A stretch of DNA of 64,000 nucleotides from Takakia lepidozioides (taxonomy: Eukaryota; Plantae; Bryophyta). Below, in pieces: positions 10,710 through 62,234 of the stretch (position 1 is its first letter; each line of letters opens with the position of its first letter). The stretch spans positions 46,004,001-46,068,000 of the forward strand of contig CM060731.1 in NCBI GenBank assembly GCA_030704615.1, read 5' to 3'. The notes beneath the pieces were generated by a model that had not been told where the DNA came from, made no database searches, and worked only from the letters and a program-made list of their open reading frames with translations. Both the position numbers and the translations under genes were made by a program.

Positions 10710-10722
10710 CTCTCTCTCTCTC

Positions 10723-12364
10723 AAAGGCCAAAAAGGCCAAAGGTCAAAAAGGCCTATGACACTGTGTGGAGAGACGGTCTATGGCTCCGACTCTGGTCTT
10801 CCGGGATCAAGGGAAAGATGTGGAGAGTGGTCCATAACTTGTATGCTCACACTAAAAGCTGTGTCACTGTAAATGGACAGAAGTCTAATTTCTTTGACAT
10901 AGACCAAGGTGTAGCTCAAGGATGTACCCTCTCCCCTTTGCTCTTCAATGTTTTCATCAATCAACTAGGATGTGGAAAGTGAGGGATTTGGGTTAAGGGT
11001 GGGTGATGCCACCATACCAGCCGTTATGTTTGCGGATGACTTCGCAGGCATAGGGGAGACTCCTTCCAACCTCCAGGGGCTGATAGATTGCGTGAAGAGA
11101 TACTTTGATCTTTGGGGGCTAGAGGCCAATGTCAGTAAATGCGCAGTGGTGGCATTCAACGACCGGGGGGAAGGAGGAGGCGATCTCAAGTGGCAGTGGG
11201 GAAGCCAAGAGATCCCTGTTCTCCCCTCCTACACCTATCTTGGCATTGAGTTTTCCTCCAACTGTAATTGGGAAGCACATATTCAAAGAGTGGTTCAATC
11301 TGGCAAACGCAAAGCGCTGGGTCTCACTAAATTTTTCCACTGCAGAGGGATCAACTCTGAAGTCAAAAAAACCATGCTTTGCCGCGTTATCAGGCCGGCC
11401 TTGGAGTATGCATCTGCTGTATGGGTTGATAACTCCAACCAGGCTAAGTCTCTTGAATCCATCCAAGTCGGGGTGCTCAAGGAGTGCATGTCAGCATGCT
11501 CCAAAACAGCTAATGTGGCTGTTCGGGGTGGGTTTGGCATTCCCCCCTTAAGCTCCCGACGCGATGAATTCAAAATCAGATGGTGGGGTCAGCTGCAACG
11601 TATGGCTAATACCAGATATCCTAAGTTAATCGACTCTATATCTTGGAAGCAGGACCGCCCTGTCAAACAGGCTAAATCCTGGCGGAAAAGGGTAGAAGAG
11701 ATTTTCAAGGATCTGAATCTTAGTCCACTAGCCATGACCCTGCTGGATAAATCTGCTTAGAAGCTGAAGTTTCCAAGCCATGTCTATTGCCAGGAAATTG
11801 TCTGAAGAAAATTAGGCAGAAAACTTCCCTCAACCTGTTTCCAGTCTGTGACATGGGTGAGGCCATCATGGATGACCTCAAGGGTCTCCCCACTTTCGGC
11901 ACTAGACTGAAATTCAAACTCAGGGCGGGTAGCCTACCTTTGAACAACAAACAGTCGCAGAGAGGAAGGGGGATTGTAAGTGCCCGTTGTGTGGGCAACC
12001 TGAAGACAATATTCACTCCTGATTCATTGTCCTGGGTACTCTCACCAACGGGACACCCTCTTCCATTCCATCAAGGAAATTGTGCCTGTACCTCTGTTTA
12101 ACAACTTTGAAAATCTTGAGGCTGAGCCAAAAGCCCAGGCCCTTTTGGGGTCTAGCTATTGGGCAAATCACACACATCAGATTGATGCTTGTGTGAAGGG
12201 ATTTCTGGAGGATATATGGAAATCTCGGATCAACTGTTTATTCCAAGGTAAATCATACTACCGGCGTCAGCCCCTGACAAAGATAGTTTCTGTCCCTTTA
12301 TGTTCCGTTCAAACTGGGCGCGGGGTCAATGGCCACAAGGCTACGGGAAACAATGTCTTATGAG

Positions 12365-21471: not shown

Positions 21472-24400
21472 TTACCGTCCAAACCAGCCTTTCTGGGGTT
21501 GTACTTCACCACCACCATTCATCAACTTGTCAAGTACAATATTCAGATCCACTGACTGTCCATTCTCTGTCAGCCTTCGCACCACAGCTCTTACTTGGTC
21601 CTTGGAAAATCCCATGACTGCCACTTTCTCAATCACTTCATCAATTGGCACCCGGTTTGTTGATAAAGGTGCTCCCCCTGAGGGACCAGCACCATTAGCC
21701 CCTGCAGGAGGCAATGACTGCTGAACTGGTTGGGCAGTGGGCAAGCGTGGGTAACCCCCACTGCCACTGCTTGGAGCGGAAGGCAGCACTGGCTGTGCTA
21801 CACGGTACACGGAGCTGGTATATCCAGGCTGCCCCATCATCTGTGAATCATACATGGATGGTCCAACCTGGCCCTGGGAATGGTATGGAGGTGGCAGTGC
21901 CAATTGGCCTGAGTTATTCCGACCAACAGGAAGCTCATAGACCTGTGGTCCACTTGGGCCAAGCTGCTGTTGACTCGGCGGCTGAGACTGCTGCATCTGA
22001 GGAGGTGGGAGCGGGCGACTTCCATAGCCTTGAGGCAAGTATGGTGGTGGCGGCGGTGCAAGCTCCTGGACATAGTTGGCCTGTTGAGGGCCTTGGTGAG
22101 GTACCTGAGGGTGAGGACCATAGGGTGGGGCTTCTGCCTGGTGGCTGTACTGTTGTGGCAACTGGGTATGTGGCCCTAGCTGCTGCTGCTGCTGGAGTTG
22201 TGGCGGCTGCTGCTGAGCGTAAAAAGACTGCATTGCCATGGAGTTCTGGGGCTGCAGCTGGTGTGGAGGTGGGCCTGGTGGCAGAGAAGGCTGCTGGTAG
22301 TGGGGCTCTGCCTGTGTTGCAGAAGGTGCCTGCAGCTGCAGCTGCTGGTGCTGTTGGGGTGGTAGCTGCTGAGATGCTGGAGGAGAAGGTGGTGGCTGCA
22401 AAGGTGGGGGGGCAGGGGGGGATGGTAACTGCTGCTGATGGTGAAGATAAGGGGGTGCCAATTGCTGCTGTGGAGGGGCATCCACCTGCTTTGGAGGTGA
22501 GGGAGGACTGGGAGGTGCCTCAAGAGCTGCTTGGACAGGTGCTGGTGCAGTAGGAGGCATCTCGGTCTTGCTCAGCTGGAGCTTTGCAAGCTGCGAGTGT
22601 GCCTCTGATATCTCCTGCCTGTCACGCAATACCTGCACACCCCGTTGCACCTGCCAATCCCGCAAGTTATGTTTCTTCCAGAGCATCATATGTGCCTTCA
22701 CAAGTATGCTAGTGAAGGTAGAAAAACCAACAAAGTGACCTTGTGCATGTCAAACTCAAGGCAGAGGAGCATAGTTACACTGCCACACTAAAAGCTGCAA
22801 TCATATGCCTGATAATGCGTTCAAGACTGAGAAACAACATCTTTTCCTCAATATCCATTCTGATGCATACATGGATTTCAGAGAGAATCCAAAATTGTGT
22901 GGTCCGCTATTAATCTACCCTAATGTTGCCAAAAGGACTAACTTACGTGCAAGCAAAGCCAACAACTTGAAAGAACAAATACCTCTCGGATCATGTTTTC
23001 CAAGGACCTCAGCTTCCCATCGGTAGAACCACTATTATTTGCTGCCTCGCCTTTGAGTTCACTCACCAGATGTTCCAGTCGCTGAGTGGTAGACTCAAGC
23101 TGGGTCAGGCGTCCACTCATGCCCTCCAGCACACGTAACAGGTTGTCGGCATACTTCTTCATAGTTCCTTCCACAGCTGCCACTGTGGCCGCTTCAACCG
23201 TGTCCTTCTCATATGTTGAAGGAGGCTGCATAGTTCGCTGAACATGCGACATTGAGCATAACAGACAACCAACAACCATCAGTACCACTCTATCCATAAA
23301 TGCCTTAACCCTATCGCTTTGAACTTTGGTATTTCTTGCCTTGCAATACTGGGTAGCTGTGTCCCAAGGTGGCCTTCATTCTCACCATGTAATGATATTA
23401 GCCCTTTGAGAGCCACACACCTGGATTTGATTTTGCCAAAGAATCTAGTATTATTTGGTTTGTGTCGAACTATCACTTTGATGGGTGAGACACATCTTGG
23501 TCACTGGATTGGCGACATGACTACTCTTTTTTAAATCAACATCTCACTTCACATTTCAGTTTGACCTCAAACGCTGCCAATTTTACAGGTTGATGCACAT
23601 ACCAGCAGTATCACCAACTGCATAGGGACTTCCACAGAGAGGTTTAGGTCATGCACCACATAATTATTCAACCATAGCTTACTTCTTACTTCCCTCCTCA
23701 CTGTGTAGACTGCCTGAATGTTTACTCATCCCACAGAGGTTTGCAGTAAATGCCACTCAAACCGATTTTGTCAAGATGCCCATATTCTCCAAGTGTACCA
23801 GAAAAAGAAAGCAGACCACAACTGAGTTCAATTCAGCTTTGAAGCTGAAAGCATACTGGCAGTTTTCCATTCTAAGTGGGTGTCAACATTTAATGTACCT
23901 GGTCCCATGATTAATATCCATTCACTCTCTGAAGTACCAATGCCAATGGCCACTAACGATCCTCGGCCCCACGGTGGCCATTAAGCCATATCCATCTCTG
24001 CTACCAGTGCAAACAGACCTCAGGCTTCTATTGTCAAAACAGATACATTCAGGGCATAAGTGCAGGACAGTTTCTCTGGCATCTGCAGAAGCAGATCTAC
24101 AGTAAATGACTTGCCACCATTCAGGTTAATCTAACCCTTGTTAGTAATTACCCACAAATGCGACTCAGATTAGGTCAAATCTGGTAATTGATCAGCTCCC
24201 TGATTACAGCTTTGAGTGGCTCCGTAGCTATCACAACCCACTCAGAATATGCAGTATATGAGTAATCAGGTCATCTGTGCGATAATGTTGACCTCCTTCC
24301 CAATCGCTACATCTAACCTTCCCCCTTCTTCAACGGTGGGATCTGTGATTTCGTCACCAACATGATCCCATTAAGACGGTTTGAACTTCCAAATCATGAA

Positions 24401-47947: not shown

Positions 47948-50356
47948 GATAGAGAGATGAAACTCACTACAGTATCCTTGGCAGAACTTCTAGGTCTAAC
48001 AGTGAGGGGTCTTCTGCTGAATGGAGGGACACAGTTGGAAAAACAGTTCCTATGATTCAAAACAGCCCTGATGAACTGGAGTATATTTCAATGGCTTATA
48101 ATGCTCCCATTAGTTCTTCTGAGATTGTGGAAGCAATTGAACATTTAAATGGATATAAAGCTGGTGGACCTGATGGTATTGTCAACGAGCTTATCAAGCA
48201 CGGTGGCGATCCCATGATAGAGGCCCTAGTTCTCCTCTTTAACCTTATCTGGAAGACTGAAATGATCCCCTTTCGCTGGCGACAGGGGGTCATTGTCAAT
48301 CTATACAAGAAGGGTGACAGAGAAGAACCGGGGAACTACCGTGGCATCACGCTCCTCAATGCTGTTGGCAAGACAATCTGCAGAGTTATAAGTACTCGTC
48401 TCGAGGTTGATCTGGAGTCTAGAGGTTGTTTCCACGAAGGCCAAGCTGGCTTTCGGCGAACAGGGGCTGTGTGGATCATATCTTCACTCTAAGCCAGATT
48501 ATCCAGGGAAGGAAAAAAGAAGGGAAACCCACTTATGTTTTTTTCCTGGATGTCAAAAAGGCTCATGACACACTGTGGAGAGATGGCCTATGGTTCCGCC
48601 TCTGGTCTTGTGGAATCAAGGGAAAGATGTGGAGAGTTGTCCACAACTTGTATGCTCACACCAAAAGCTGTGTCACTGTTAACGGACAGAAGTCCAACTT
48701 CTTTGACATAGACCAAGGTGTAGCTCAAGGATGTACTCTCTCCCCTCTGCTCTTCAATGTTTTCATCAATCAACTCCGCGAGGATGTGGAAAGTGAGGGA
48801 TTTGGGTTAAGGGTGGGTGATACCACCATACCAGCCCTTATGTTTGCGGATGACTTCGCAGGCATAGGGGAGACTCCAACCAATCTCCAGGAGTTGATTG
48901 ATTGCGCGAAGAGATACTTTGATCTTTGGGGCTAGAGGCTAATGTCAGCAAAGGGCAGTGGTAGCATTCAACGACAGAGGAGAGGGAGGAAGTGATCTTA
49001 AGTGGCAGTGGGGTAGCCAAGAGATCCCGGTCCTCCCTTCCTACACTTACCTGGGCGTTGAGTTTTCCTCCAATTGTAATTGGGATGCACATATCCGGAA
49101 AGTTGTTCAAACTGGCAAGGGCAAAGCTCTGGGGCTCACTAAATTTTTCCACTGCAGAGGGGTCAACTCTGAGGTTAAGAAAACCATGCTTTGTCGCGTT
49201 ATTAGACCTGCCTTGGAGTACGGATCTGCTATATGGGTTGATAACTCCAACCAGGCTAAGTCTCTAGAATCCATTCAAGTGGGGGTGCTTAAGGAGTGTA
49301 TGTCAGCATGCTCCAAAACAGCCAATGTGGCTGTTCGGGGTGAGTTTGGCATTCCGTCCTTAAGCTCCCGACGAGATGAATTCAAGGTCAGATGGTGGGG
49401 TCAGCTGCAACATATGCCCAACACCAGATATCATAAGTTAATCGCTTCTATATCTTGGAAACAGGACCGCCCTGTCAAACAGGCTAAGTCCTGGCAGAAG
49501 AGAGTAGAAGAGATCCTCAAGGACCTGGACCTGGATCCGCAAGTCTTGACCCTGCTGGATAAATCTGACTTAGAGGCTGTAGTGTCCTCAGCCATGTCTG
49601 TTGCCATGAGATTGTCTGATGAAAATGAAGTCAGGCAGAAAACTTCCCTGAACTTGTTTCCAGTCTGTGACATGGGGGAGGACATCTTGGATGACCTCAA
49701 GGGTCTACCCACTCTCGCACTAGACTGAAATTTAAACTCAGGGCTGGAAGCCTACCTTTGAACAGCAAACAGAAGCAGAGAGGAAAGGGAGAGTGCAATT
49801 GCCCGCTGTGTGGGCAATCTGAAGACAGTATTCACTTTCCGATACACTGTCCGGGGTTCTCTCACCAAAGAGACGCTCTCTTCAAATCTATCAAGGGAAT
49901 TGTGCCTGTACCCCTGTTTAACAACTTTGAAAGTCTTGAGGCTGAGCCAAAAGCCCAGGCCCTCCTGAGGCCTAGTTTTTGGGCAAATCACACACAGCAG
50001 ATTGATGCTTGTGTGAAGGGATTTCTAGAGGATATCTGGAAAACCCGGATTAATTCTTTATATGGAGGTAAGTCTCACTACCAACGTCAGCCCCTGACAG
50101 AGGTAGGTTCTGTCCCTTTTGTTCCCGCTCAAACTGGGCGCGGGGTCAATGGCCACAAGGCTACGGCAAACAACGTCTTATGAGTACAATCTCTCTAGAT
50201 AGCTGATATGCTATGGTTTCGGGTAAATTGCCCCCCAGTTAGCCTTCACGGCCTCGCTAGTAGTTATTTTTTCCACCGTTATGTGAACTTTTATTTAAGT
50301 TAATTTGATCAGAAGGGCCTCTGTCCCCTTTCCTACCCAAACAAAAAAAAAAAAAA
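42200..50356 (+). mobile_element. Degenerate near-full-length L1-clade LINE (ORF1 zinc knuckle, EN, RT, zf-RVT, poly(A)), interrupted by a nested LINE
   Basis: ORF1 remnants GRGFYLALF..KVFLFPW and CFVCNGEGHIRSNCP (~42700); endonuclease WVVGGDFN (~43728), LDKFY, FDHSAV; RT NYRPITLLN, DQTGF, LDFKKAFDSIDW, RQGCPL, MYADD; zf-RVT CSLC..ESIEHCLTEC; poly(A) at about 50343-50356. Many stops and frameshifts; 5' boundary uncertain. Confidence 0.85.
47958..50189 (+). mobile_element. CT-targeting LINE copy (5'-truncated, ~2.2 kb) nested in the (CT)n of the L1 3' UTR
   Basis: Near-identical to 8490-10708 apart from small indels. It follows (CT)n at 47914-47946. TSD tctctctagatag at about 47940-47952 and 50190-50202. 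Ends TGA-GTACAA. Confidence 0.92.
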
Positions 50357-50687: not shown

Positions 50688-53239
50688 TCACAAAAGATAC
50701 CACTGCGTATTCTCGTGCAAAAATTCGCACCGAATTGAAGTATGAGTGGCGTAGTTGCCCACGTCTCCATCTGTACCTGCCTTGTCACCGTCATCTCTAA
50801 CCGAAGCCTTCGCCAGAGCGCCAGTGACAACCGATTCATCGTCTTCGACATCCTTCCAAGAGCCGTCGAGCAAGGCGGAAGGATTCATCAACAGAACGCT
50901 TGCGAGGCATTCATGGCGCAAGCGTATGTACTCAAATCCATCTCCACTATCCCGCTTCACCTCCCTGACAATCCCGATCACCGCGTCGTGCGAGGGTCGT
51001 CCTAAAGATGCTTGCAAGTGGTTGGTTTTCTGCAGAAAATCTTCAATCTCCACCTTTCCGTTGGGAAAGCCCAAGGCGGCCTCAGCCTCCTTGCGTCGCT
51101 CGTCTTCGAACGTCGTCCTCATTATGACCGCGTAGTCCTCTCCCCGTGCCCAATAAAGAGGCTGCTGCAGCTTTTCCCGATCTGGGATGATGACATTGAT
51201 TTGTAAGATGAGGGGCTCGCTACCGGCTTGAGGGATATGGGCGGTGAATTGGGTGGAGAAGGCTGTTTGGTCGGTGACAGGTTTTGGGATGAAGAGTCCA
51301 GGCGAATTCAGCGATAGTCCCTGCTGGGTTAGAGTCGCCTGACTTTCGACATCCCTGGCGAAGCCGTCCTGAGGTATCCCCAAAAGAGATTCCGGCGCCC
51401 ATCGGAAGCCTTCTCTTTGTACTCGGGCATGCGTGTTGAAGATGATGTCGAAGGGATATTCCTTCAGCATGGACAGGAAGATCACCATACAGTGCTCTTC
51501 AAGCTCTTTTCCATTCCCGGCGGCCTTTAGAATATCTTTCGGATCTAGGCCCATGATACCGCAAACGCACAGCGTCTGATCAGCCAATTTTGAGGTCGTG
51601 CGGAACTGGAGCGCCTTGATCATCGGCGGCAATGCTTGGTCGATGGTCTTAAAAAGCCCAAGCTTGAGGAAATCATGGAGGATGACAAACTCTCCCATAT
51701 TTTTCGCCGACGATTCATGTGGAAACGTGATGCAGTGCCCGTCCTCGGTCGACTTATCCTTGCCGTCAGCGAACCCGCCGATATCTTCACGAAAACTTAG
51801 TGCTTGATCTTTAAACTGCAAAAGCAACTCGTTCGCGAGGATTCCCTCCTGGAACGTCCACAACCGATGGTTCCAATTGGAGAAATACAGACAGACACTC
51901 TTCTGGAGGTCGTTCGCTGTTGATGGCACTCTTCGAATGTCAGACGATAGCACGAGCACCGCAGACGCATATCTATAAGTACCTTTTAGTCCCCGGATGG
52001 CAAGCTGTCGATGCCCCTTTAGATCTTTCGCGACGGGTATACAGAGAGTGTCCATCCAAAAGTGGCTTGGGTTGCCCTTCGCCTTGCCAGATTCTGCAGC
52101 TGCGTTCACCACCTTTTGAATCTGTGATACTTGGCATCGCCGCAAACAATTATGAGTCGGATTGCCCATTCCATCGGACCACCTGTTCATACAAGTTTGT
52201 CAGTTTCACAAATCAAGTATAGCCAATTCGATCGGTTGCTTAGGTAGGAAGCTTACACGTGGGAGATTGCTATGTACTGTGGTGAATCCGACTTGTCCTT
52301 ATCAAAGGTCGCAACTTGTAGTTTCTGTTCCGCTTCGCTCCAGCAGATGATCGGCGTACCTCCGTCGTCCATGATTGCAACGACACGACTCACATCGACG
52401 TAGACGTCTTCGCAGCCATCGCAGTTTTCCGCATGTGCCCTCTGGTACGTCGCTTCATTAATATTTTGCGCGACACATGTGTCCTCCGTGCAACCCCTGC
52501 TCGCGTGCATCGCTTTCCCCTGCGGATTCGGTAACGCTGCGATATAGTAATGCCCATCGATGCCCATATCCGAGAGACTTCTCCGAACATCCATCGGACA
52601 CCAACCTTGCGCCAGCATCCGATTCTTCAAAAGGATGGAATACCCCCACCTGTTCGAGGTTCGTTTAATGTCGTGGAACGACAGCATGGCTTGCTTGAGG
52701 GTATGCCCGAGCGCGATGATGGACATGGAGATCTCCTCGGTAAGCGGCCATTTCGCGTGCTCAGGTTTCGCGATCTCCGTCAGACGAGGACGGCCGGGCG
52801 TGGCGCAATAGTAGTTGACGTACTTTGATAGCTCGCTCAGGATGGTCTCCGTCTCCATGAGCCACCTTTCCAAACGACGCTTGTGTTTGCGATCCTTCTC
52901 TTTCTGGACCTTTTTCCTCCATTTGCGTATCTTGGACGGCAGATACTTGGTTGTAATGCACCTTTTATTTTCATCTAGGAATTCGGCGGGGTTCGCTTTG
53001 ACCCCGTTCACTGCGAGGACTTCGATCACGCACCCAAAGTAGAGCCAAGTTTGGAAAAAGTCTTGCACTTCAGCTGCGGATCTACCGCCAAACGAATTTT
53101 CACCTCGCAGGTCTTCTTTGGACCAGTTCCGCCGACTCGGATAGCATAGGAACCCGCCTTCTCCAGAACTGTACTCAAGGGATGTGGCATTTGGGACACG
53201 GATATGTTGAACGCCGTCTGGCAGAGCGAAGTGATCCAT
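50688..53239 (-). CDS. Fungal-type HET-domain (heterokaryon incompatibility, PF06985-like) protein, ~825 aa, two exons
   Basis: Exon 1 53239-52257 and exon 2 52182-50688 total 2478 nt with an open frame. HET motifs are joined across the intron: YIAISHV|WSDGMGN, FWMDTLCIP, AIR..KGTYRYASAVLVL, SNWNHRLWTFQEG, RTTSKLADQTLC, GFRWAPESLL. The N-terminus has FFQTWLYFG, GWCP and a Cys/His cluster (H..CTEDTC...H..NC.GC). Confidence 0.9.
52183..52256 (-). other. 74-nt fungal-style spliceosomal intron in the HET gene
   Basis: GTAAGC donor, ACTGAC branch site close to the AACAG acceptor. Splicing restores the SHVW motif. Confidence 0.88.
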
Positions 53240-55189
53240 ATTAAGCAGCACACTATCTCGCAAAACCTTTACTACCACAAGCAATAGTTAAATTTCCCCT
53301 GGAAAGATGGTCTTGTAATATTATAACATTAGCGCTTTTCAATCCACGATGGTTGAAACACGAACTGCGTCAAGCAACAAACACCGGATGCCGGAGTTTA
53401 GTTCAGAACAACTTACGCACGCGGCCACAAATCACTGGAGGGAGGAAACAACATAGTGCAGATTTGTGAAATCAGGGCAGAAGTATGCTTGAGTTATCAG
53501 AGTAAGAGAAAAAAATGTAACTGAGGTCAGAAGGGATACAATACCTTGGATGGCGAGAACAGCGCCCTGTGATGTCGAAGGAACGATTGCAAAGGCTTGT
53601 TCAATATATCCTGGCAAACACAGGAGAAGAAGGAGTCAAGGAGAGGTAGGAGCCAATTTAGCAGCTGACAAAAGGGTTAGGTATTCAGATTCATAAAAGA
53701 AACGATGCTGTAGAACATGGTGGATTTAAAAAGTGAAGCAACCAAGGAGCTACAGGTACAACGTTAGCTTCAGTCATGGGACAGTATGGTAAACACAGTG
53801 GATTAAGCTCACTGGCACCTCATGCTCATTGGTAAACGCAGGACTGGAACAATCATCACCTGGAGCAACTCGCGCCAGCTCAAAATGGAACAGTCTACCA
53901 AGAGCAAGCTCCACGGGGACAAGGTCAAGATCATGTATCAGACAACAGAAAAGAACCAGAGGTTTTGCCATGCAGCACAACGCACCACAGCTCTAGCTCC
54001 TTAGAGGCAGTTACAGATGCAAAAGCTGATGGCTTCAAGGAGAATCAGCACAGCTCACAAGTTGTTGAAGTTGCAGCTGATGGCTTGGAGGAGAAAGTTG
54101 TGCATGTGAAACTATCCACCACCCCCATGTCCCTACAAGGAAAAGTGATGTCCAGTTCTTTGGGAAAACCTGGCTCATCCAAGTCTGGGCTCATAATAAG
54201 CTCTCCAACGACCACAGCTGAGATCGCAAGTCCTCTTTGCAGCTCACTAAGAGCAAGGTAGCACTAGTTGCTATCCACTCCTTAACAGTGATAAAGAAAC
54301 AATGACATATGAAATCAAAGCACTTTCTGAGTTTTTCTCCTAACGTGTCAAGGAAAATGAAAGAATTGGTCATTTCAGGTCTTTGTTAGGAATAGAGGAG
54401 TTACCTTTGCTCCGAAGCGAAACAGAAAATTTCAAACACTTGCCACACTGAGGACCTCAGCTGAGAGCCTACAAGGTCTTCAAGTTGCCAGAGTTCTGCC
54501 AGAAATCATGCATTTTGTGTTCTAGCCTGACAATGTTCACTGAACACTTGTACTGTTAGAATTGTTCCCCCAAGCGAAGCAAATACAGGAAATTGGGATA
54601 CTGCAGGATTTATAGTGGGAACAAGGAGCCACATTCATCTTTGAAGCCAAAAACACTGGAAGGGGAATTGGCTGCATCAGATCCATTGGTCGCAACACCT
54701 GCTGGTCTTGGAGGAAAGAGCCAAAGTTTAACAGTACTGAGGAGCTCCCCTCGGTTATCTGCAACCTTATCCCAGAAACGGAAGCCAACACAGGTTTGTG
54801 CACATCTATGTGAGCTTAATGCTCTCACTTCAGCAGGAGTTGCAGTTGGTAGGTCTGCAGTCTTGGTGAAAATTGGTTGTACCATTAAAATCCCAGAAGA
54901 GTCTATCTTACTGATTATACCTTCCTATGACAATCTGTTGACATCGGCACTAGTACTTATATGAGCACTGTATTTTCCAGGCACTTGTGTTGGATGAAAA
55001 GAAACAGCTTCGGCCACCAGTGATTTTTAAAGAGGGCAATGCATTGGGCTCTTCGAAAAGTGGAGGAGAGGCGGAGGAGAGGCGAACTGTAGAAGTAACG
55101 AGTCTGACAATGCTGGTCGGCATCGATATGTCCGCAACTGAAATATTAGTTGCATTATCAAAACTCGGGTAGGGGAAGACGCGGATTAC

Positions 55190-55470
55190 GCCTTTTTTTT
55201 TAATTCGGAAAATAGCAAGAGTGGCTACAGAGTTTTGCCAAAATAAGGCATATATTCTGTTCATCCATTCAAAATAGGACAGAACCATCCACATCCGGAA
55301 TTTCATCCATTTATATCATCAACATTTGACGAATTCATCCATAATAATTATTGTTTTTGGAGAAATTTGGAGATTTCATCCATGAAAAAACATGGAATTT
55401 GCTACGGAATATTCTTTTCTATTTTTTGAGGTCGCCATTTGGCGAAAATTCGCCAAAAACAAAACGCCGC
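55190..55470. mobile_element. Non-autonomous hAT-like MITE, copy A (decayed left end)
   Basis: Direct homolog of 58022-58269 (ggaaaatagcaagagt.gctacagagttttgc...gatttcatccatgaaaaaac...ggcga..attcgcca). Confidence 0.75.
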
Positions 55471-56899
55471 CTGTCCCCTTTTATCTTTAAGAAAAAAAAG
55501 TGTTAACCTTGTCTGAATGTTATTTTTTCCCTACTCCCGACTGTTAACATTTATCCAGGGAGACTTGGTCTGCCCTGTTACTTCTATAAACGTTAAACTG
55601 CCATAAATGTTAAGATACTCCTACTTGTGCTGCACACTAACAAATGTTAAGTCTTATTTGTTAACAATTGTTGAGTCTTTGTCATAATCTCTAATTTATT
55701 GTGGCTTCTATTAATTAATTGATTCATGTTTGCTGTTTTTTTTTTGGGGCCCCACCTTTGCAGAGCCCACAATTTACTAATTTAGTAAGTAGTAGGTAGT
55801 AAAGAGGGGGCCCTCCCTTATATACCCTCTGGGGCAGTGAGACCCTTCTAGAAGCCAGCCCACCGGGGGACCCTTCTAGAAGGCCTTACACACATGTTAA
55901 CCCTACAAGATTCCCTATTCTAAATTTGGCCAATTCCTCCCTTTTTTTTTTGGACTCCCTATCTCATTCCCTAATACACGGAGCGCCCCATATCTAACTC
56001 CTGGGCCACACTAATTCCTGGACCACTCTAGAATCAGGGCTGAATGAAACGGCTCTACATATCATATTTGGCATTATACGTATTTTGGCCTGAGGTTGAA
56101 CGTCAAGCCTAAGAGAATATTGTCTCTAGCATAAAGAATCTTATCTTGAGGATGAAAACGATTCTCTTAATAATGTCTTTGAAAACAAATCTTATCTGGA
56201 GATTAAATATTAGTCTAAAGTCCTATGGTTTTTGGCATGTTGTCTTCAGGTCCATAGTACAATGTGTTTTGCAATCTTTTCCGTACCTGTGGAGCCCACA
56301 GGGTATCGGTAGAAGCACGTTGGTGATAAATGGCACACAGTCGCAGGCTTGGGCCTTCCTGTCCTGTCCTGGAGTCCTGGCAGCAGCAGCCAATCATGCC
56401 GACAGGCCACAGCCCTGTTTCTCATGTTATTACATACATATACTAACATCCATCCTGTCTGGCATACCCTAATCTCTGACATTTTATTAACTTGTTGCGA
56501 CAGCATTGATGGTTATAACACTATATGTAGCTGCAATCTCTGTGCTCCCACGAGGCTCTCGTGAAAGTTGAAACTGTGGTTACATTATGATCCATAAATG
56601 TGAGGGTCTGGAGTTGCAAGTAATCGGATTCCAGAATGTAAACTAGATATTATACATGTGCACACTGGTAAGGTAGTCCTGTGTCATGTGCTTGGAAATA
56701 AAGCTTTGCAGGATTTTAATCATCTCCCTGTGAAGTTCAAAGATCGCTATGTACCTTGTGCGAACTTCCCAATGACGCTGGCTCAAAGTTTATATCCCTC
56801 ACCTCGAAGAGAGAAGTGGGTCTGGTAGAGTGTTTCAAAAGTACATTGTGTGTAGCTGTGCGTGCTGATCTGAGATTGATGTTTTTTTCTTACCTTCAC

Positions 56900-58003
56900 A
56901 CGCCCGCGAATTTTTGGTAGTGACGCTGGTCTCCAAGCAGCGCTCCTTCCGAGGAGGCTTCACACCCCTGGCCACACATGTTGGCCCGCCCCTCCATGTC
57001 TTCATGTAGCTCGCCAAAACTGGCTCGCCCATTGCCCCTAAACTTTTCCTTTTCCCTTTGCCCTTCCCTGCCCGGACCTGCACGCACGTCCCCATTATGC
57101 AATATGGGGGAATGATAAGAACAACTTTACATAGGGTATTCTAATATTATTTGGATTAAGCAGTTTTAAACTTGATATGAACAACCTTCCGAAAGGTATC
57201 CATCACGAATGACCTAATGATAGGAACAACCATCGATAAGGTATTAAACACATTTGTTTCGATTTTTATGCAAGTTAAAAAATGACACGGAATCCGAAGG
57301 GTACACCAATATGTTTAGATAGAGCAATTTTAAAATTGAGATGAACAACCTCCGCCCGATTTCAATGCGCATGACCTAATGGTAAGAACAACCTTCCTTA
57401 AGGTATTAAACAAATTTATTTGGATTTATTCAAGTTTAAAAATGAGTCACAATAACCTTCCAAAGGGTACTCTAACATTATTTAGATTAAGCAATTTTAA
57501 ACTTGACATGCACAACCTTCCGAAAGGTAACCATTGGAGATGACCTGATGGCAAAAACAACCTTCCGTAGTATTACACATATTTGTTTGAACATTATGTA
57601 AGTTAAAAAATGATTGAAACAACCTTCAGGAGGGTATACCAATATGTTTGGATTTAACAATTCTAGAATTGATATATTTTTGGTTTATATTCAATCTTAA
57701 AATGAGCCTGGTTAGAGTTAGCAATTTTAGAGTACCCTCTGGAAGGTTGTTCTCCCCAAATTGCATAATGGTGAAGTGTGTGCAAGGTCCGGGCAGGGAA
57801 GGGCAAAGGGTAAAGCAAAAGTTTACGGGCAATGGGCGAGCCAGTTTTGGCGAGCTACACGAAGACGTGGAGGGGCGGGCCCACATGTGTGGCCGGGGGT
57901 GTGAAGCCTCCTCGGGAGGGGCGCTGCTTGTAGACGCGCTGATGGCCCCTGGGAGACTAGGGAGCCACCGTCGTTACGACGCGGCTACCGAAAATTCGCG
58001 GGC
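56900..58003. mobile_element. Foldback / Mutator-like element with ~200-bp inverted arms and internal ~165-bp tandem repeats
   Basis: About 56900-57110 is the reverse complement of about 57753-58003 (e.g. gtagctcgccaaaactggctcgcccattgccc vs gggcaatgggcgagccagttttggcgagctac). The interior has roughly three units rich in ACAACCTTCC..AAGGTA. Confidence 0.8.
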
Positions 58004-58021
58004 CTTCACACAACATGGGGT

Positions 58022-58269
58022 CAGTGCTTTTTTATGAAATTTGGAAAATAGCAAGAGTAGCTACAGAGTTTTGCAGGATATAGCCATTTATTCTGTTCAT
58101 CCACCTATGTGCCATCATCCATATTTGGCGAATTCATCCATTTTTTATTTTTTATTTGGAGAAATTTGGCGATTTCATCCATGAAAAAACAGTGGATTTG
58201 CGACAGAAAATTCGATTTTATTTTTTGAGGTCGAAATCTGGCGATTATTCGCCACTAAAAGAATGGCTG
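58022..58269. mobile_element. hAT-type MITE, copy B, with 8-bp TSD
   Basis: CAGTGCTTTTTT...AAAAGAATGGCTG ends, flanked by perfect catggggt duplications at 58014-58021 and 58270-58277. Confidence 0.82.
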
Positions 58270-58720
58270 CATGGGGTCAGCGTTATTGTGTGCTTATGTA
58301 GCGTTTCCGAAAAGAACGGTGGGCTCGGATCGAAACCCAAGAGCACATGGAGACAGCGTGATGCAGACGCGTCGTCCACTGGGCCCCAACGGCCATCAGT
58401 CCACAGTCCAAACCAAGCACCGCATTCTTGCAGTATATTATATTACGGTATTACTGCTATTGTGATTCTGCGGCCCCACTGCCCAGATGAAGCTCGCTCC
58501 CCTGGAAGCATCAGTCGGAGACTCGTTTCAAGTCCCTCAGGTACCTGCAAAAGCATACAGACAACGACTCATCCACTGAAGAAGTACATCAATCAATTCA
58601 ATGATCATTGTACTTCTTAGTCAAAAGGGGTTTAATAACTGTGGAAGCCTGTCCGAACAACCGAACCTCTGATTGCCACTGGCCAGGCACCAAACTCTGG
58701 AGTCTGCAATGCTCTTGAGC

Positions 58721-58830
58721 ATAAAGATAAAGATAAAGATTCTTTACCGTCCAGTGAATTTACAGAGCCTACTGCTCAACACACAAGCCATCGAGGGCCC
58801 AATGGGCGGTCTGAAGGCACATGTTGAAGG
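58721..58830 (-). mobile_element. 3' end of a retroposon (LINE/SINE) with a (TTTATC)n tail
   Basis: Reverse complement of 63395-63492 (ggccctcgatggc..gtgttgagcagtaggctctgtaaattca.tggacg.taaaga..ctttatc repeats). Confidence 0.65.
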
Positions 58831-59414
58831 ATTGAACCCAGGATCACCTAGGTTATGCACAGGCAAGGCACAGACACCCAACCAGTGGGCTACCTGCTCA
58901 AGTGCATAGAACGCTATGCATAAGTATTATGTTGTGAGGGCCACTTGTAAAAACATGATACCGACTGCACCCAGAGAATAATGAGGTTGACTTGGTACAA
59001 GTCGGTGGAGTCTGGCTGCAGCTGGCTGTGCACTTTGAATCAATGGCACCAGTTCCCATCCAAATAGCTGTTGACATGTATGCCGCTGCAAACTCAAGGG
59101 AAAACTACCCCAGACTAGGGGTTTCAAATGGTTAAGTTACATACTGCAGTGGGATGATCCGTTGCCGATCAAAACACCCAGAAACAAACTCGTTGATTAT
59201 GACGTTTATACAGTACAATCCTGCCTAACCTTCCCGCTCTCACCTCTGATGAGTCCCACCGAGAGTCCAGAGAAGAGTTTGTCAGTCATCTCCTTTGTTA
59301 GTGACAGTGGGTCGCACGAATGTATGGAACACTTGCTTGAGAAGGTCGAACCATAAGCAGTAACGTAAGTTAGCAGAGGTTGTTAGCATTGCTTATCTTT
59401 GCAACCTCTCAGTG

Positions 59415-60623
59415 ATGAGTTCCACCGAGTCCCTGCTGTCCGCGCAATGGCGGAGCCCCTCCGACATCTTGTCGGTCTTACTCATTATTGGCGGTGATGT
59501 AGTACAGAAAGCTCTTGCTCAACTCTCAGGAGATCGTCTGGTGCCCGTAGCATTCAGTTTCGGATGGGTAGCATACTCGTTCAGCACCCTGATGGCAATC
59601 GTGGGAGATGGACGTCTAATGCCTCTGCCGGACTACCCCGCCAAGGTCATCAACGCCGAGTCTGGCTACATCCGCTCCAACAGATCCTGGGTACTCAGCC
59701 GGTTGCTCCGGGACTTTGAGTTTCCACTTGCTGACCACATCGGCCTACATATTACTGTCTTCAAAGCGGAAGAAAGGGAAGCAGGTAGTCCAGACAAGGA
59801 CTGGTGTTGGGCAAGCGGAGTTCTGGTCATAGTTTTGCAGCTGGGAATCGCAGCTATCCCATGCGGATTGTACGGTGACCCGGGAATCCTCCTTGCGACA
59901 GCTGCAGGAACACTGCTAGCTCTGACTACAGGCTCGTTACCGCAATGGCGGTTTGAAAAGTGGGCATGTCGAACAAAGAGCAAGAAGGTGGTAAGTCTGA
60001 CTGGCGGGAATGGCACAAGGCATGTGATGGTCATCCTCGGCGATGGAAGAGGACTGGATCTCGAGGATCTAGCAGCGGCGGAGAGCCCAATGATGAGGCG
60101 ACGATCCGAGCAGGGCTACCGCCTGGCGAAGCGTGTGCGTGACGAAAATGGGGCACTCCTGAAGGACAAAGAAGTTTTGATGCTTGGCAGTGTCCCTGCC
60201 TCGTTCCGGATAACCCAGGTTATGTGTGTGGTGCTAGCAGCTCTGTGGATTGTATTTCTCCTCACGGTTGCGGGGCTGAAGCAGAACACATGGTACCTGC
60301 TTGCGGTTGGCGGTCTCGGCATGATCCAAAATGTGGTGGTTGCAGGGGCGAGTCGGGGACAAAGCACAACAGGCATTCACTTGACTAAAATTGAGTCATT
60401 TGAGCAACCAAAGGTCATGGATGCATTGATGGATCTTGAAATAAACCATGAAACTGTCGGGAGGTCTCTGCTTAAGGAATTCTTTAATGGGAACTTACGA
60501 CCTGCAGAAAAAGGCTGGTGGGATGGCACGGACAAGGAATCATACGAGAGCGATAGGCGCAGGAAGAGGCCTGAGAGCTTGCGATATGGTGCTCCTTCCG
60601 CATTCCAGTCTCATCAGATATGA
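59415..60623 (+). CDS. Fungal-type conserved multi-pass membrane protein (~402 aa), partner of the HET gene
   Basis: Intronless intact ORF with 4-6 hydrophobic segments. Motifs QW..PSDILSVLLIIGGDVVQKALAQL, PVAFSFGWVAY, DGRLMP.PD, R.NRSW.L.RLLRD, LPQW..EKW, GNG.RHV, LDLEDLA, WYLLAVGGLGM.QN and KVM.ALM.LE resemble a family of ascomycete hypothetical proteins I recognise from recall. Possible 48-nt 5'UTR intron GTAAGT...CTCAG at 59365-59412. Confidence 0.8.
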   Translation: MSSTESLLSAQWRSPSDILSVLLIIGGDVVQKALAQLSGDRLVPVAFSFGWVAYSFSTLMAIVGDGRLMPLPDYPAKVINAESGYIRSNRSWVLSRLLRDFEFPLADHIGLHITVFKAEEREAGSPDKDWCWASGVLVIVLQLGIAAIPCGLYGDPGILLATAAGTLLALTTGSLPQWRFEKWACRTKSKKVVSLTGGNGTRHVMVILGDGRGLDLEDLAAAESPMMRRRSEQGYRLAKRVRDENGALLKDKEVLMLGSVPASFRITQVMCVVLAALWIVFLLTVAGLKQNTWYLLAVGGLGMIQNVVVAGASRGQSTTGIHLTKIESFEQPKVMDALMDLEINHETVGRSLLKEFFNGNLRPAEKGWWDGTDKESYESDRRRKRPESLRYGAPSAFQSHQI

Positions 60624-61589
60624 CTTGCGTTTGAGCTATAGGGATGGGGGGCACGGTTCTAAATTTTCCCTATGCATCATTATCGAAAGTCATGAAATTT
60701 TTTCCTGCTAGACAGTTTTATTTGTGTCCTCTGTTTTTCCTATCTACTAGTCAAAGTCATGTTGTTGTTTTGTTAGTTCTATCAAAGATTTGTATTCACG
60801 AGCTCAACTCAGTCAAGTACCATAAGGATTGCACCACCAGCTGTAACCATGAAGACCTTTCATCTCTGATGCTTGTAGGCTGCCTGACTATTTATCGAAA
60901 CCTGGCTCACATGCAGATGTGTAGGTCTGCGTGCATTACTGCATCAGGAAGCGAGAGTTTCAAGGGAGCGAGACTCAACTAGCACATTTTTATCAGCACC
61001 AATCAGGATCTCATGTGGCAGCATCAATTGGTATATTGTAACAAAATCAGTCCCTCCAAAGGCAAATTGCTGTTTCAGCTCCATGTGTGACTGTGTGAAT
61101 TTTTTTCAAAAGAGCTGTGCAATTGTCAAGTCGGTATCATATCTCCCCTTCCTGCTGCTTCCTTGCGCGGGTCTGGTCTAGGGACCAGGAGGGGGAGGCA
61201 GGAGTGTAAAGTTGGTTGGAGGTGAATGCTCCAACCGGGTGGTATTTGTATCCAATTTCATCTCTTCTTGGATGTTTCATCCACATGGGATGAAAGCCTC
61301 GAACTGACAAGGGAATTGGCCTTCATCGCATCTTCCACAAAAGCAAAATGTATTTTTCCCTTGCAAAGGGGTAAAAAATGGGCCCACCCACTGCGGTGGG
61401 AGATTTCACCTGATTGGCCTGCAAATTTGCAGACCCTGCTGCAACAGGTAGGTAAGTACCTTTTGTCCGTTATTGTCATTTTCTTGGGAGTCATACCCAT
61501 TTTCTATCCCGGGGTCACTCTTTCCTACAAAGTCAAACTTACCCACTCGGCGCCTAGGGGTTAGGAAGCACACTTCTAGATACCACTAC

Positions 61590-62135: not shown

Positions 62136-62234
62136 CTGTTTGGGATTGTTCGAGTAGAAGAAATTAAATTGACGGCCGATCTCCTGTTTGGGATTGTTCG
62201 AGTAGAAGAAATTAAATTGACGGCCGATCTCCTG
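62136..62234. repeat. Exact 48-bp tandem duplication
   Basis: ctgtttgggattgttcgagtagaagaaattaaattgacggccgatctc occurs twice, at 62136 and 62184. Confidence 0.9.

What the first reader, a model, noticed from the sequence alone, without database searches (positions are those of the whole stretch)
50688..60623. Head-to-head fungal-type HET + membrane-protein gene pair in a plant chromosome: candidate two-component cell-death/defence module
Seen: two intact ORFs transcribed divergently (HET-domain gene on -, ATG 53239; multi-TM protein on +, ATG 59415). Both have fungal-like architecture (0-1 tiny introns), unlike the intron-rich host genes, and only TE-like debris lies between them. Known: HET (PF06985) domains are fungal non-self cell-death effectors structurally related to TIR domains, and fungus-derived HET genes have been reported in mosses. 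From recall (unverified), this membrane family often sits head-to-head with this HET subtype in ascomycetes. Inference: the two genes were co-transferred as a unit and kept intact while the surroundings decayed. This suggests coupling, e.g. a HET/TIR NAD+-processing enzyme making a signal that gates a membrane effector, similar to bacterial Thoeris (TIR + TM effector), or a toxin-antidote pair, repurposed for plant immunity or antifungal antagonism.
Basis: partly seen in the sequence, partly recalled or inferred. Interest (0 to 1): 0.92.

Follow-up and report, generated by a model that had tools for sequence, protein, structure and literature searches.

The report
Fungal HET and membrane-protein gene pair in moss
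A moss chromosome carries two intact fungus-derived genes side by side, a HET cell-death-domain gene and an uncharacterised six-helix membrane-protein gene. The same two families are repeated next-door neighbours in fungi, so this looks like a captured two-gene module whose function is still untested.

Summary
An intact 825-aa HET-domain gene (minus strand, one 74-nt intron) and an intact 402-aa six-helix membrane-protein gene (plus strand) lie head-to-head, 6.2 kb apart, between host LINE copies in a bryophyte chromosome. Both are fungal-type.

New here: the two families are recurrent immediate neighbours in fungi. I found 8 independent loci: six head-to-head with gaps of 0.4-2.5 kb, one tandem, and one annotated as a single protein in Alternaria. 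A Sphagnum-like locus has the same layout with a decayed HET.

The partners do not co-diverge. Closely related membrane genes sit beside very different HET genes (Mantel r = -0.2; AU p = 0.0017). The window's membrane gene groups with Sphagnum copies (dS about 0.5) inside an Agaricomycete-rich clade. Its HET gene groups with Helotiales/Chaetothyriales-type genes. Co-transfer as one unit is plausible but not shown.

Function is inferred only: probably a het-c/pin-c-like non-self/cell-death pair. No expression data could be obtained, and the complex prediction gave no verdict.

HET transfer to mosses is already published. The membrane partner and the conserved pairing appear undescribed. Unchecked first-stage notes report similar pairs elsewhere in this genome.

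The parts
52257..53239 (-). HET gene exon 1: the subfamily-specific N-terminal domain (about 320 aa, helical, with FFQTWLYFG and Cys/His motifs) plus the first HET block YIAISHV
   Evidence: ORF. Alignment A3 with 23 relatives: all 23 positions that are >=90% conserved are kept. AlphaFold model has pLDDT 85 and no PDB fold match.
52183..52256 (-). Single 74-nt intron (GTAAGC...CTGAC...AACAG, phase 2), fungal in size, with a CTRAC-type branch site
   Evidence: Sequence read. Same position and phase in L002, L003 and L013. Absent in L042, L092, L094, L084 and L079.
50688..52182 (-). HET gene exon 2: the rest of the HET domain (HFWMDTLCIPV at 52032-52064; RLWTFQEG at 51843-51866), a conserved middle region, an acidic variable tail and the conserved C-terminal QWYLL, plus the stop
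   Evidence: Pfam PF06985 gives 21.3 bits on this exon alone, against a cut-off of 22.5. Unsplit relatives score 33.7-51.9 bits. Alignment A1. 83 of 93 positions that are >=90% conserved are kept.
59415..60623 (+). Intronless gene for a 402-aa membrane protein: six transmembrane helices in three hairpins that carry one cytosolic alpha/beta domain. The family has no Pfam model.
   Evidence: ORF. More than 1000 homologues. AlphaFold model has pLDDT 91 and pTM 0.87. Hydropathy. No PDB fold match. 74 of 75 conserved positions are kept.
53240..59414 (.). 6.2-kb spacer between the two start codons. It holds a foldback element (56929-57935) and two ~270-bp repeat copies (55190-55464, 58026-58263). 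No coding potential was recognised.
60580..60777 (+). Non-coding stretch 3' of the membrane gene that is still alignable with the Sphagnum copies
   Evidence: blastn: 68% identity over 208 bp to L001 and 78% over 69 bp to L096.
49000..50196 (+). 3' end of a host LINE copy that bounds the pair on the HET side. This is evidence of integration in host DNA.
   Evidence: 97% identical to window 9533-10715 and 33079-32531. RT domains in neighbouring ORFs.

Best explanation
This is a fungal two-gene module that reached a bryophyte genome by horizontal transfer and is integrated there.

Gene 1 encodes a cytosolic 825-aa protein of one particular HET subfamily. It has a ~320-aa helical N-terminal domain with conserved Cys/His residues, then the HET (TIR-like) cell-death domain, then a variable acidic tail.

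Gene 2 encodes a 402-aa protein of an uncharacterised fungal family. It has six membrane helices in three hairpins, and almost all of its soluble mass lies on the cytosolic side.

Shown:
- Both genes are intact and keep nearly all family-conserved residues.
- The HET gene keeps the fungal intron.
- The two families are recurrent immediate neighbours in fungi, usually divergent and 0.4-2.5 kb apart.
- In the moss the spacer has been widened by repeat insertions.

Inferred:
- The recurrent linkage reflects a functional pair of the kind known from fungal allorecognition (het-c/pin-c, un-24/het-6, Bh/Bp).
- The HET protein would be the fast-changing death-inducing partner. The conserved membrane protein would be the partner it monitors, is triggered by, or acts on at the cytosolic face of a membrane.
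- Whether the moss uses the pair (for example in antifungal defence) or merely carries it is open.
For: Intact genes and the intron.

HET identity: the three HET blocks are present and relatives pass the Pfam cut-off.

Fungal affinity of both genes.

Linkage:
- A membrane-family gene lies directly upstream of a HET gene of this subfamily in L002, L042/43, L079, L084, L092/93 and L094 (head-to-head) and in L050/53 (tandem).
- Alternaria triticimaculans XP_049220160.1 is annotated as one 890-aa protein: a HET-subfamily part at residues 1-580, then a membrane-family part at 610-853.
- 3 of 33 HET loci with at least 2.5 kb of upstream sequence are paired, plus 2 short contigs. The membrane gene was never found elsewhere in about 270 kb of flanks. 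Poisson P <= 1.5e-4 even at one family member per Mb.
- A Sphagnum-like scaffold (L096) has the same divergent layout, about 7 kb apart.

Spacer repeats.

Constraint:
- 74/75, 83/93 and 23/23 conserved positions are kept.
- Membrane gene against Sphagnum: dN/dS 0.28-0.35.

Precedent:
- Closely linked HET + partner genes, including a membrane partner: PMC2988816.
- HET as a TIR-related death domain: PMC10197012.
- HET genes induced by Botrytis in P. patens: bioRxiv 10.1101/2020.10.29.361329.
Against:
- No evidence of physical contact: the complex prediction gave no verdict.
- The partners do not co-diverge. Mantel r = -0.2, p = 0.7, while the two halves of the HET protein give r = 0.8, p = 0.003. 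The sister membrane genes L050/L092 have HETs in different well-supported clades. AU rejects the moss membrane genes plus the L002 membrane gene as a clade (p = 0.0017).
- Most loci of either family are unpaired: about 30 of 33 HET loci, and the membrane loci L005 and L007 (Armillaria).
- In Sphagnum the membrane gene is intact and multicopy while its HET neighbour carries in-frame stops. Neither gene strictly needs the other in mosses.
- The window's membrane protein has proline at a tryptophan that is invariant in 47 relatives (W156P).
Confidence: 0.6

Rival explanations
1. The two genes are passengers without coupling. Both arrived on one piece of fungal DNA, or separately in a region that accumulates foreign DNA and transposons (like the 'fungal regions' of Physcomitrium). 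They lie together only for that reason. Their intactness reflects youth or independent uses.
For: - Apparent donors are incongruent.
- Most family members are unpaired.
- Sphagnum keeps the membrane gene beside a dead HET.
- The surroundings are transposon-rich.
- Published fungal regions hold several unrelated fungal families (PMC7911284).
Against: - The same two families are adjacent, mostly in the same head-to-head layout, in 8 independent fungal loci. This is far above chance.
- The layout recurs in a second moss lineage.
Confidence: 0.25
2. Mobile cargo. The membrane gene, with or without a HET neighbour, rides on a mobile element that multiplies within mosses and moves between them. The pair is kept by selfish spread rather than by host benefit.
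For: - One 90%-identity cluster of the membrane protein holds 45 member sequences in Sphagnum balticum, and another holds 17 in S. jensenii.
- Window against Sphagnum copy: 80% nucleotide identity and dS 0.47-0.54, with homology running about 200 bp past the stop.
- The one host gene that could be compared gives dS 1.25-2.28.
- Unchecked first-stage notes list further HET + membrane pairs elsewhere in this genome.
Against: - No terminal repeats or transposase were found around the pair.
- Homology with Sphagnum stops at the start codon on the 5' side.
- There is only one control gene, and its orthology is unproven.
- The HET genes of the two mosses are only 28-30% identical, so the whole pair did not move as one piece between them.
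Confidence: 0.15
3. The HET domain is a TIR-like NAD+-processing enzyme whose product gates the membrane protein, which acts as a Thoeris-like effector. Alternatively, the two form a toxin-antidote pair.
For: - The HET domain is a remote relative of TIR (PMC10197012).
- The conserved glutamate motif RLWTFQE is intact.
- The membrane protein has conserved polar residues inside its helices and a conserved cytosolic domain.
Against: - Enzymatic activity of HET had not been established as of that review.
- The membrane protein matches no Pfam, PADLOC or PDB nucleotide-binding or effector fold.
- Sphagnum keeps the membrane gene without a working HET, and an unchecked note reports the reverse elsewhere in this genome. 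This is hard to fit to an addiction module.
Confidence: 0.1
4. Contamination or chimeric assembly. The pair belongs to a fungus living on the moss, not to the moss chromosome.
For: - Both genes are fungal-type and have higher GC (52-53%) than the spacer (44%).
Against: - A LINE copy 490 bp from the HET stop is 97% identical to two other copies in the same window, which also holds a plant DUF1421 exon.
- The 6.2-kb spacer is AT-rich repeat DNA, unlike the 0.4-2.5 kb fungal spacers.
- Chromosome-scale Sphagnum assemblies carry the membrane gene as well.
Confidence: 0.02

Closest known systems
Neurospora crassa het-c / pin-c (and un-24 / het-6): closely linked two-gene heterokaryon incompatibility loci
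   Same: A HET-domain gene lies next to a partner gene, and in het-c/pin-c the partner is a membrane protein. The HET side is the fast-diverging one and the partner is more conserved (PMC2988816).
   Different: [quoted passage not shown] The partner here is an unrelated six-helix protein with no Pfam model. The pin-c position next to het-c is confined to Neurospora/Sordaria, whereas this pairing spans several fungal classes. No population data or incompatibility phenotype exists for this pair.
Fungal Regions FR1/FR2 of Physcomitrium patens (Sun et al. 2020, New Phytol 228:1169)
   Same: Fungus-derived HET genes sit in a moss chromosome together with another conserved fungal gene of unknown function ('CF') and mobile elements, and a role in antagonism towards fungi was proposed (as summarised in PMC7911284 and PMC11228847).
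   Different: The P. patens HET genes are described as truncated, while this one is full length with its N-terminal domain and fungal intron. No HopQ1-like gene was seen in this window. I could not determine whether 'CF' is the membrane family found here, because the paper is not held. No P. patens protein is among the 120 best membrane-family hits.
Podospora anserina het-B (Bh HET + lectin-fold protein with Bp PII-like protein) and gasdermin/protease two-gene clusters
   Same: These are adjacent two-gene fungal cell-death modules in which one partner carries the death domain (PMC10890737, PMC10197012).
   Different: The partner families are different. Those systems have genetic proof of interaction, and this one has none.
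Bacterial Thoeris and other TIR + effector defence systems
   Same: A TIR-like domain protein is encoded next to a second protein that could be an effector, sometimes a membrane protein.
   Different: HET is only a remote relative of TIR and has no shown NADase activity. The membrane protein has no match to any PADLOC model or signal-binding fold. This is a eukaryotic module with no operon.

Membership tests
HET domain (Pfam PF06985) | Match to the Pfam model above the gathering score | tested here: inconclusive
Exon 2 alone scores 21.3 bits against a cut-off of 22.5, because profile positions 1-26 lie in exon 1. Unsplit relatives at 30-54% identity score 33.7, 37.8 and 51.9 bits, with the domain starting at the YVAISHVW block.
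HET domain (Pfam PF06985) | The three conserved sequence blocks: Y-x-A-L/I-S-Y/H-x-W; W-I/M-D-x-L-C-I; R-x-W-T-x-Q-E | tested here: met
   YIAISHV|W spans the splice junction. HFWMDTLCIPV and RLWTFQEG are in exon 2. All three blocks are invariant or nearly so in alignments A1 and A3.
HET domain (Pfam PF06985) | Induces regulated cell death when expressed | not testable with these tools
   This needs expression in a fungus, yeast or plant.
Linked two-gene HET incompatibility loci (het-c/pin-c type) | The HET gene is closely linked to a specific partner gene | tested here: met
   8 independent fungal loci, 1 Sphagnum-like locus and this window.
Linked two-gene HET incompatibility loci (het-c/pin-c type) | Divergent haplotypes kept by balancing selection, with linkage disequilibrium between the two genes | not testable with these tools
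   There are no population samples. The only hint is that closely related membrane genes are paired with very divergent HET genes: L042/L094, L050/L092 and window/Sphagnum.
Linked two-gene HET incompatibility loci (het-c/pin-c type) | Non-allelic interaction of the two products triggers cell death | not testable with these tools
   The complex prediction gave no verdict, which is evidence neither for nor against.
Thoeris-like TIR + effector system | An effector with a recognisable signal-binding or executioner domain (SLOG, Macro, SIR2 or a known membrane effector) | tested here: not met
   No Pfam, PADLOC or PDB match. The best structural Z is 5.8, to generic helical bundles.
Thoeris-like TIR + effector system | A TIR-type enzyme that makes an NAD-derived signal | not testable with these tools
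   The conserved glutamate is present. However, HET enzymology was unestablished in the literature I read.
Moss 'fungal regions' (Sun et al. 2020) | Cluster of fungus-derived HET, HopQ1-like and CF genes with mobile elements | tested here: inconclusive
   The HET gene and mobile elements are present. No HopQ1-like domain occurs in any ORF tested. Whether CF is the same as the membrane family could not be checked.

The most novel reading that the evidence does not exclude
The HET + six-helix membrane-protein pair is a widespread, so far undescribed fungal two-component non-self/immune module. In it, a conserved membrane protein is watched or used by interchangeable, hypervariable HET partners. 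Bryophytes have captured such pairs more than once, and the membrane gene has spread among mosses more recently than the host lineages diverged.
Probability: 0.3. Interest if true: 0.8.

Novelty: new variant of a known kind. Interest (0 to 1): 0.62.

Why it matters
HET-domain genes are among the most abundant and least understood fungal immune-type genes. Only a handful have a known partner. A conserved partner family with a confident but unmatched fold gives a concrete handle on what one HET subfamily senses or targets. It is found next to that subfamily in lichen-forming, helotialean and dothideomycete fungi and again in two moss lineages. For plant biology it extends the published fungus-to-moss transfer of HET genes from single genes to a linked pair. 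It also offers a testable case of whether a fungal cell-death module can be re-used by a plant.

Tried and rejected
- Binding: complex prediction with HET exon 1, HET exon 2 residues 4-268 and the membrane protein scored 0.00. That is no verdict and counts neither way.
- Fold of the membrane protein: Foldseek against PDB gave E > 2. VIA wide gave a best Z of 5.8 to generic helical bundles. The atlas returned only unnamed fungal clusters.
- Fold of the HET N-terminal domain: no match, with E >= 1 and Z <= 6.4.
- Families: Pfam on the membrane protein and 47 relatives gave only chance hits. PADLOC gave none. The atlas feature search gave unnamed fungal clusters.
- Co-divergence: rejected by the Mantel test and tree comparison.
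- Further HET or membrane-gene remnants in the window: none.
- Sun et al. 2020 is not held, so I could not check whether its 'CF' family is this membrane family.
- Host identity: the best named hits of the one host exon are only about 55% identical, to liverworts, Sphagnum and Ceratodon. The species stays unknown to me.
- The spliced HET protein was never joined. The exons were searched, aligned and treed apart by reference.
- I considered and rejected the idea that the Sphagnum HET neighbour is intact with introns. It has in-frame stops inside the aligned blocks.
Full report
**What is in the sequence**

The minus strand carries two long ORFs, 52253-53284 and 50688-52190. A single 74-nt intron joins them: 52256..52183, GTAAGC...CTGAC...AACAG, phase 2. 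Splicing restores the motif YIAISHV|WSDG and gives an 825-aa product that starts at ATG 53239. All relatives begin with the same MDH(F/L)P N-terminus.

The plus strand carries an uninterrupted ORF from ATG 59415 to the stop at 60623, encoding 402 aa. The two start codons are 6175 bp apart and the genes diverge.

I did not build or search the joined HET protein. The exons were handled apart by reference.

**Host context**

Earlier notes of the scan call the organism a moss. The window holds a plant DUF1421/FLOE-like exon at 21472-22701. Its best named relatives are bryophyte proteins at about 55% identity.

A LINE 3' end at 49000-50196 lies about 490 bp from the HET stop. It is 97% identical to two other copies in the window.

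The spacer between the two genes is AT-richer, 44% GC against 52-53% in the genes. It holds:
- a 1-kb foldback element;
- two ~270-bp repeat copies;
- no ORF with a Pfam match.

Contamination or a chimeric assembly is therefore very unlikely.

**The HET gene**

Exon 2 alone falls just short of the Pfam HET cut-off (21.3 against 22.5 bits), because the first block of the domain lies in exon 1. Unsplit relatives pass the cut-off with the domain starting exactly at that block. All three HET blocks are present and invariant.

The protein belongs to a distinct subfamily. Its ~320-aa N-terminal domain carries FFQTWLYFG and a set of conserved Cys/His residues. The confident model of that domain (pLDDT 85) is helical and matches no solved fold.

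The window gene keeps 23/23 (exon 1) and 83/93 (exon 2) of the positions that are at least 90% conserved in relatives.

In trees it pairs with a 1.8-kb metagenome contig, L012 (71% identity). Both sit in a fully supported clade of 10-16 sequences whose only named members are Bisporella (Helotiales) and Phialophora (Chaetothyriales).

The intron has the same position and phase in the closest fungal relatives L002, L003 and L013. It is absent in more distant members. This is strong evidence that the gene came from that fungal lineage with its intron.

**The membrane gene**

It belongs to a family of about 1170 clusters at 50% identity, 384 of them at E <= 1e-30. The family has no Pfam model.

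The AlphaFold model is confident (pLDDT 91, pTM 0.87). It shows six hydrophobic helices in three hairpins. The three long, basic, soluble segments form one alpha/beta domain, presumably cytosolic, and the loops on the other side are tiny. No solved structure resembles it beyond generic helical bundles.

The window protein keeps 74 of 75 conserved positions. The exception is proline in place of a tryptophan that is invariant in 47 relatives (W156P).

In a careful tree it forms a clade (100/98) with Sphagnum balticum and S. jensenii proteins and two unnamed sequences. That clade is sister (99/97) to a clade with one member labelled Umbilicaria vellea MAG. Both lie inside a clade (100/99) whose other named members are all Agaricomycetes.

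**Is the pairing real?**

Yes. I searched with the HET subfamily in metagenome contigs and public assemblies, then looked for the membrane family in the flanks with tblastn and a family HMM.

| Locus | Layout |
|---|---|
| L002, L042/43, L079, L084, L092/93 (GCA_030012865.1), L094 (Letrouitia subvulpina MAG) | membrane gene directly upstream of the HET gene, head-to-head, gaps 0.4-2.5 kb |
| L050/53 | tandem |
| Alternaria triticimaculans XP_049220160.1 | annotated as one 890-aa protein: HET-subfamily part followed by a membrane-family part. I cannot tell a true fusion from a merged gene model. |

Among 33 distinct HET loci with at least 2.5 kb of upstream sequence, 3 are paired. Two more paired loci are on short contigs. 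The membrane family never appears elsewhere in about 270 kb of flanks. The chance probability is at most 1.5e-4 under a generous background density.

The pairing is thus recurrent but far from universal. Bisporella (L004), L008 and about 30 other HET loci lack the membrane gene. The membrane loci L005 and L007 (Armillaria) lack any HET gene within 10 kb.

**A second moss lineage**

Scaffold L096 is 94% identical to S. balticum over 6.7 kb. It has an intact membrane gene and, about 7 kb upstream on the other strand, a HET gene of the same broad subfamily.

That HET gene is only 28-30% identical to the window's. Its best match is the basidiomycete Obba rivulosa at 41-43%. It carries in-frame stops. 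The S. balticum chromosome locus L001 keeps only a remnant.

**Do the partners share a history?**

Not detectably.
- Distances between membrane genes and between their HET neighbours are uncorrelated (Mantel r = -0.2, p = 0.7). The two halves of the HET protein, used as a control, correlate (r = 0.8, p = 0.003).
- The sister membrane genes L050/L092 and L042/L094 have HET neighbours in different clades.
- A tree that joins the moss membrane clade with the membrane partner of the nearest paired HET (L002) is rejected (AU p = 0.0017).

The pattern is a conserved membrane gene beside interchangeable, very divergent HET genes. This is what fungal incompatibility loci look like.

Co-transfer of the window pair on one piece of DNA remains the simplest reading of the layout, and repeat insertions explain the wide spacer. 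But no sampled fungus carries this combination.

**An unexpected side result**

| Comparison | Nucleotide identity | dN | dS | dN/dS |
|---|---|---|---|---|
| Window membrane gene vs Sphagnum copy | 80% (homology runs about 200 bp past the stop) | 0.15 | 0.47-0.54 | 0.28-0.35 |
| Window membrane gene vs fungal homologues | not computed | 0.23-0.30 | saturated | not estimable (about 0.09 by the one method that ran) |
| Host DUF1421 exon vs its best Sphagnum homologue | 73-77% in the two short stretches blastn aligned | 0.34-0.37 | 1.25-2.28 | not computed |

If that single control is representative, the moss copies of the membrane gene are younger than the split of their hosts. Together with the 45-member cluster in S. 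balticum, this keeps a mobile-cargo reading alive.

**Mechanism**

Nothing was shown directly.
- The complex prediction gave no verdict.
- No defence-system model matches either protein.
- No expression data could be obtained.

My best-supported reading rests on analogy with het-c/pin-c, un-24/het-6 and Bh/Bp, and on the topology: a cytosolic HET protein, and a membrane protein whose mass is cytosolic. On that basis the pair is most likely a fungal non-self/cell-death pair in which the HET protein is the variable executioner and the membrane protein its conserved partner.

The Thoeris-like signalling idea is not excluded, but nothing supports it.

**Novelty**

Already published:
- transfer of HET genes from fungi to mosses;
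- 'fungal regions' with HET, HopQ1-like and conserved fungal genes.

Apparently new, as far as the held literature shows:
- the membrane partner family;
- its conserved pairing with one HET subfamily across fungal classes;
- the presence of the pair in two moss lineages.

Whether the published 'CF' family is this membrane family could not be checked.

Noticed in passing
window 59415-60777 against L001 10359-11776: The membrane gene is 80% identical in nucleotides to the Sphagnum balticum copy (dS 0.47-0.54), and the homology continues about 200 bp past the stop. The one comparable host exon (DUF1421) gives dS 1.25-2.28 against its best Sphagnum homologue. The fungal-derived gene may be younger than the split of the two mosses.
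   Followed up: partly
window 59880-59882 (residue 156 of the membrane protein): Proline replaces a tryptophan that is invariant in all 47 aligned relatives, including Sphagnum. The residue lies at the turn between membrane helices 3 and 4.
   Followed up: no
L096 932-2998 (minus) and 10133-11311 (plus): This is a Sphagnum-like scaffold. A decayed HET gene with in-frame stops, closest to the basidiomycete Obba rivulosa, lies about 7 kb upstream of an intact membrane gene and is divergent from it. This is the same layout as in the window, but with a quite different HET.
   Followed up: yes
P0002, P0003 (Sphagnum balticum, S. jensenii): The 90%-identity clusters of the membrane protein hold 45 and 17 member sequences. 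The gene is multicopy in Sphagnum, which suggests recent amplification.
   Followed up: no
P0441 = XP_049220160.1, Alternaria triticimaculans: This protein is annotated as a single 890-aa product. Residues 1-580 resemble this HET subfamily and residues 610-853 resemble the first 246 residues of the membrane family. It is either a real fusion or two merged tandem genes.
   Followed up: partly
L004 1-289 and L092 14875-16941: Two independent loci of this HET subfamily (Bisporella; GCA_030012865.1) each have a DUF6536 + DUF8419 gene within 10 kb. This may be a further recurrent neighbour.
   Followed up: no
L050 3065-4015, 8927-10873, 13637-14454; L017 6881-7929 and 8642-11074: Several fungal contigs carry two or three paralogous HET genes of this subfamily within 10 kb, so the genes occur in local clusters.
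   Followed up: no
window 52253-53239 (HET N-terminal domain): Conserved Cys/His positions (C214, H245, C250, C255, H269 and a C-x-C) suggest a metal-binding site in a domain with no known fold.
   Followed up: no
window 62136-62231: A perfect tandem duplication of a 48-nt unit (two copies, 100% identical) lies downstream of the membrane gene.
   Followed up: no
window 56929-57935: A foldback element with 151-nt arms (93% complementary) surrounds about 166-nt internal tandem repeats. No other copy occurs in the window.
   Followed up: partly
P0091 (ENA metagenome, 670 aa): The first ~60% of a membrane-family protein is followed by WD40 repeats in one predicted ORF. This is either a fusion with a repeat sensor domain or a gene-calling artefact.
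   Followed up: partly
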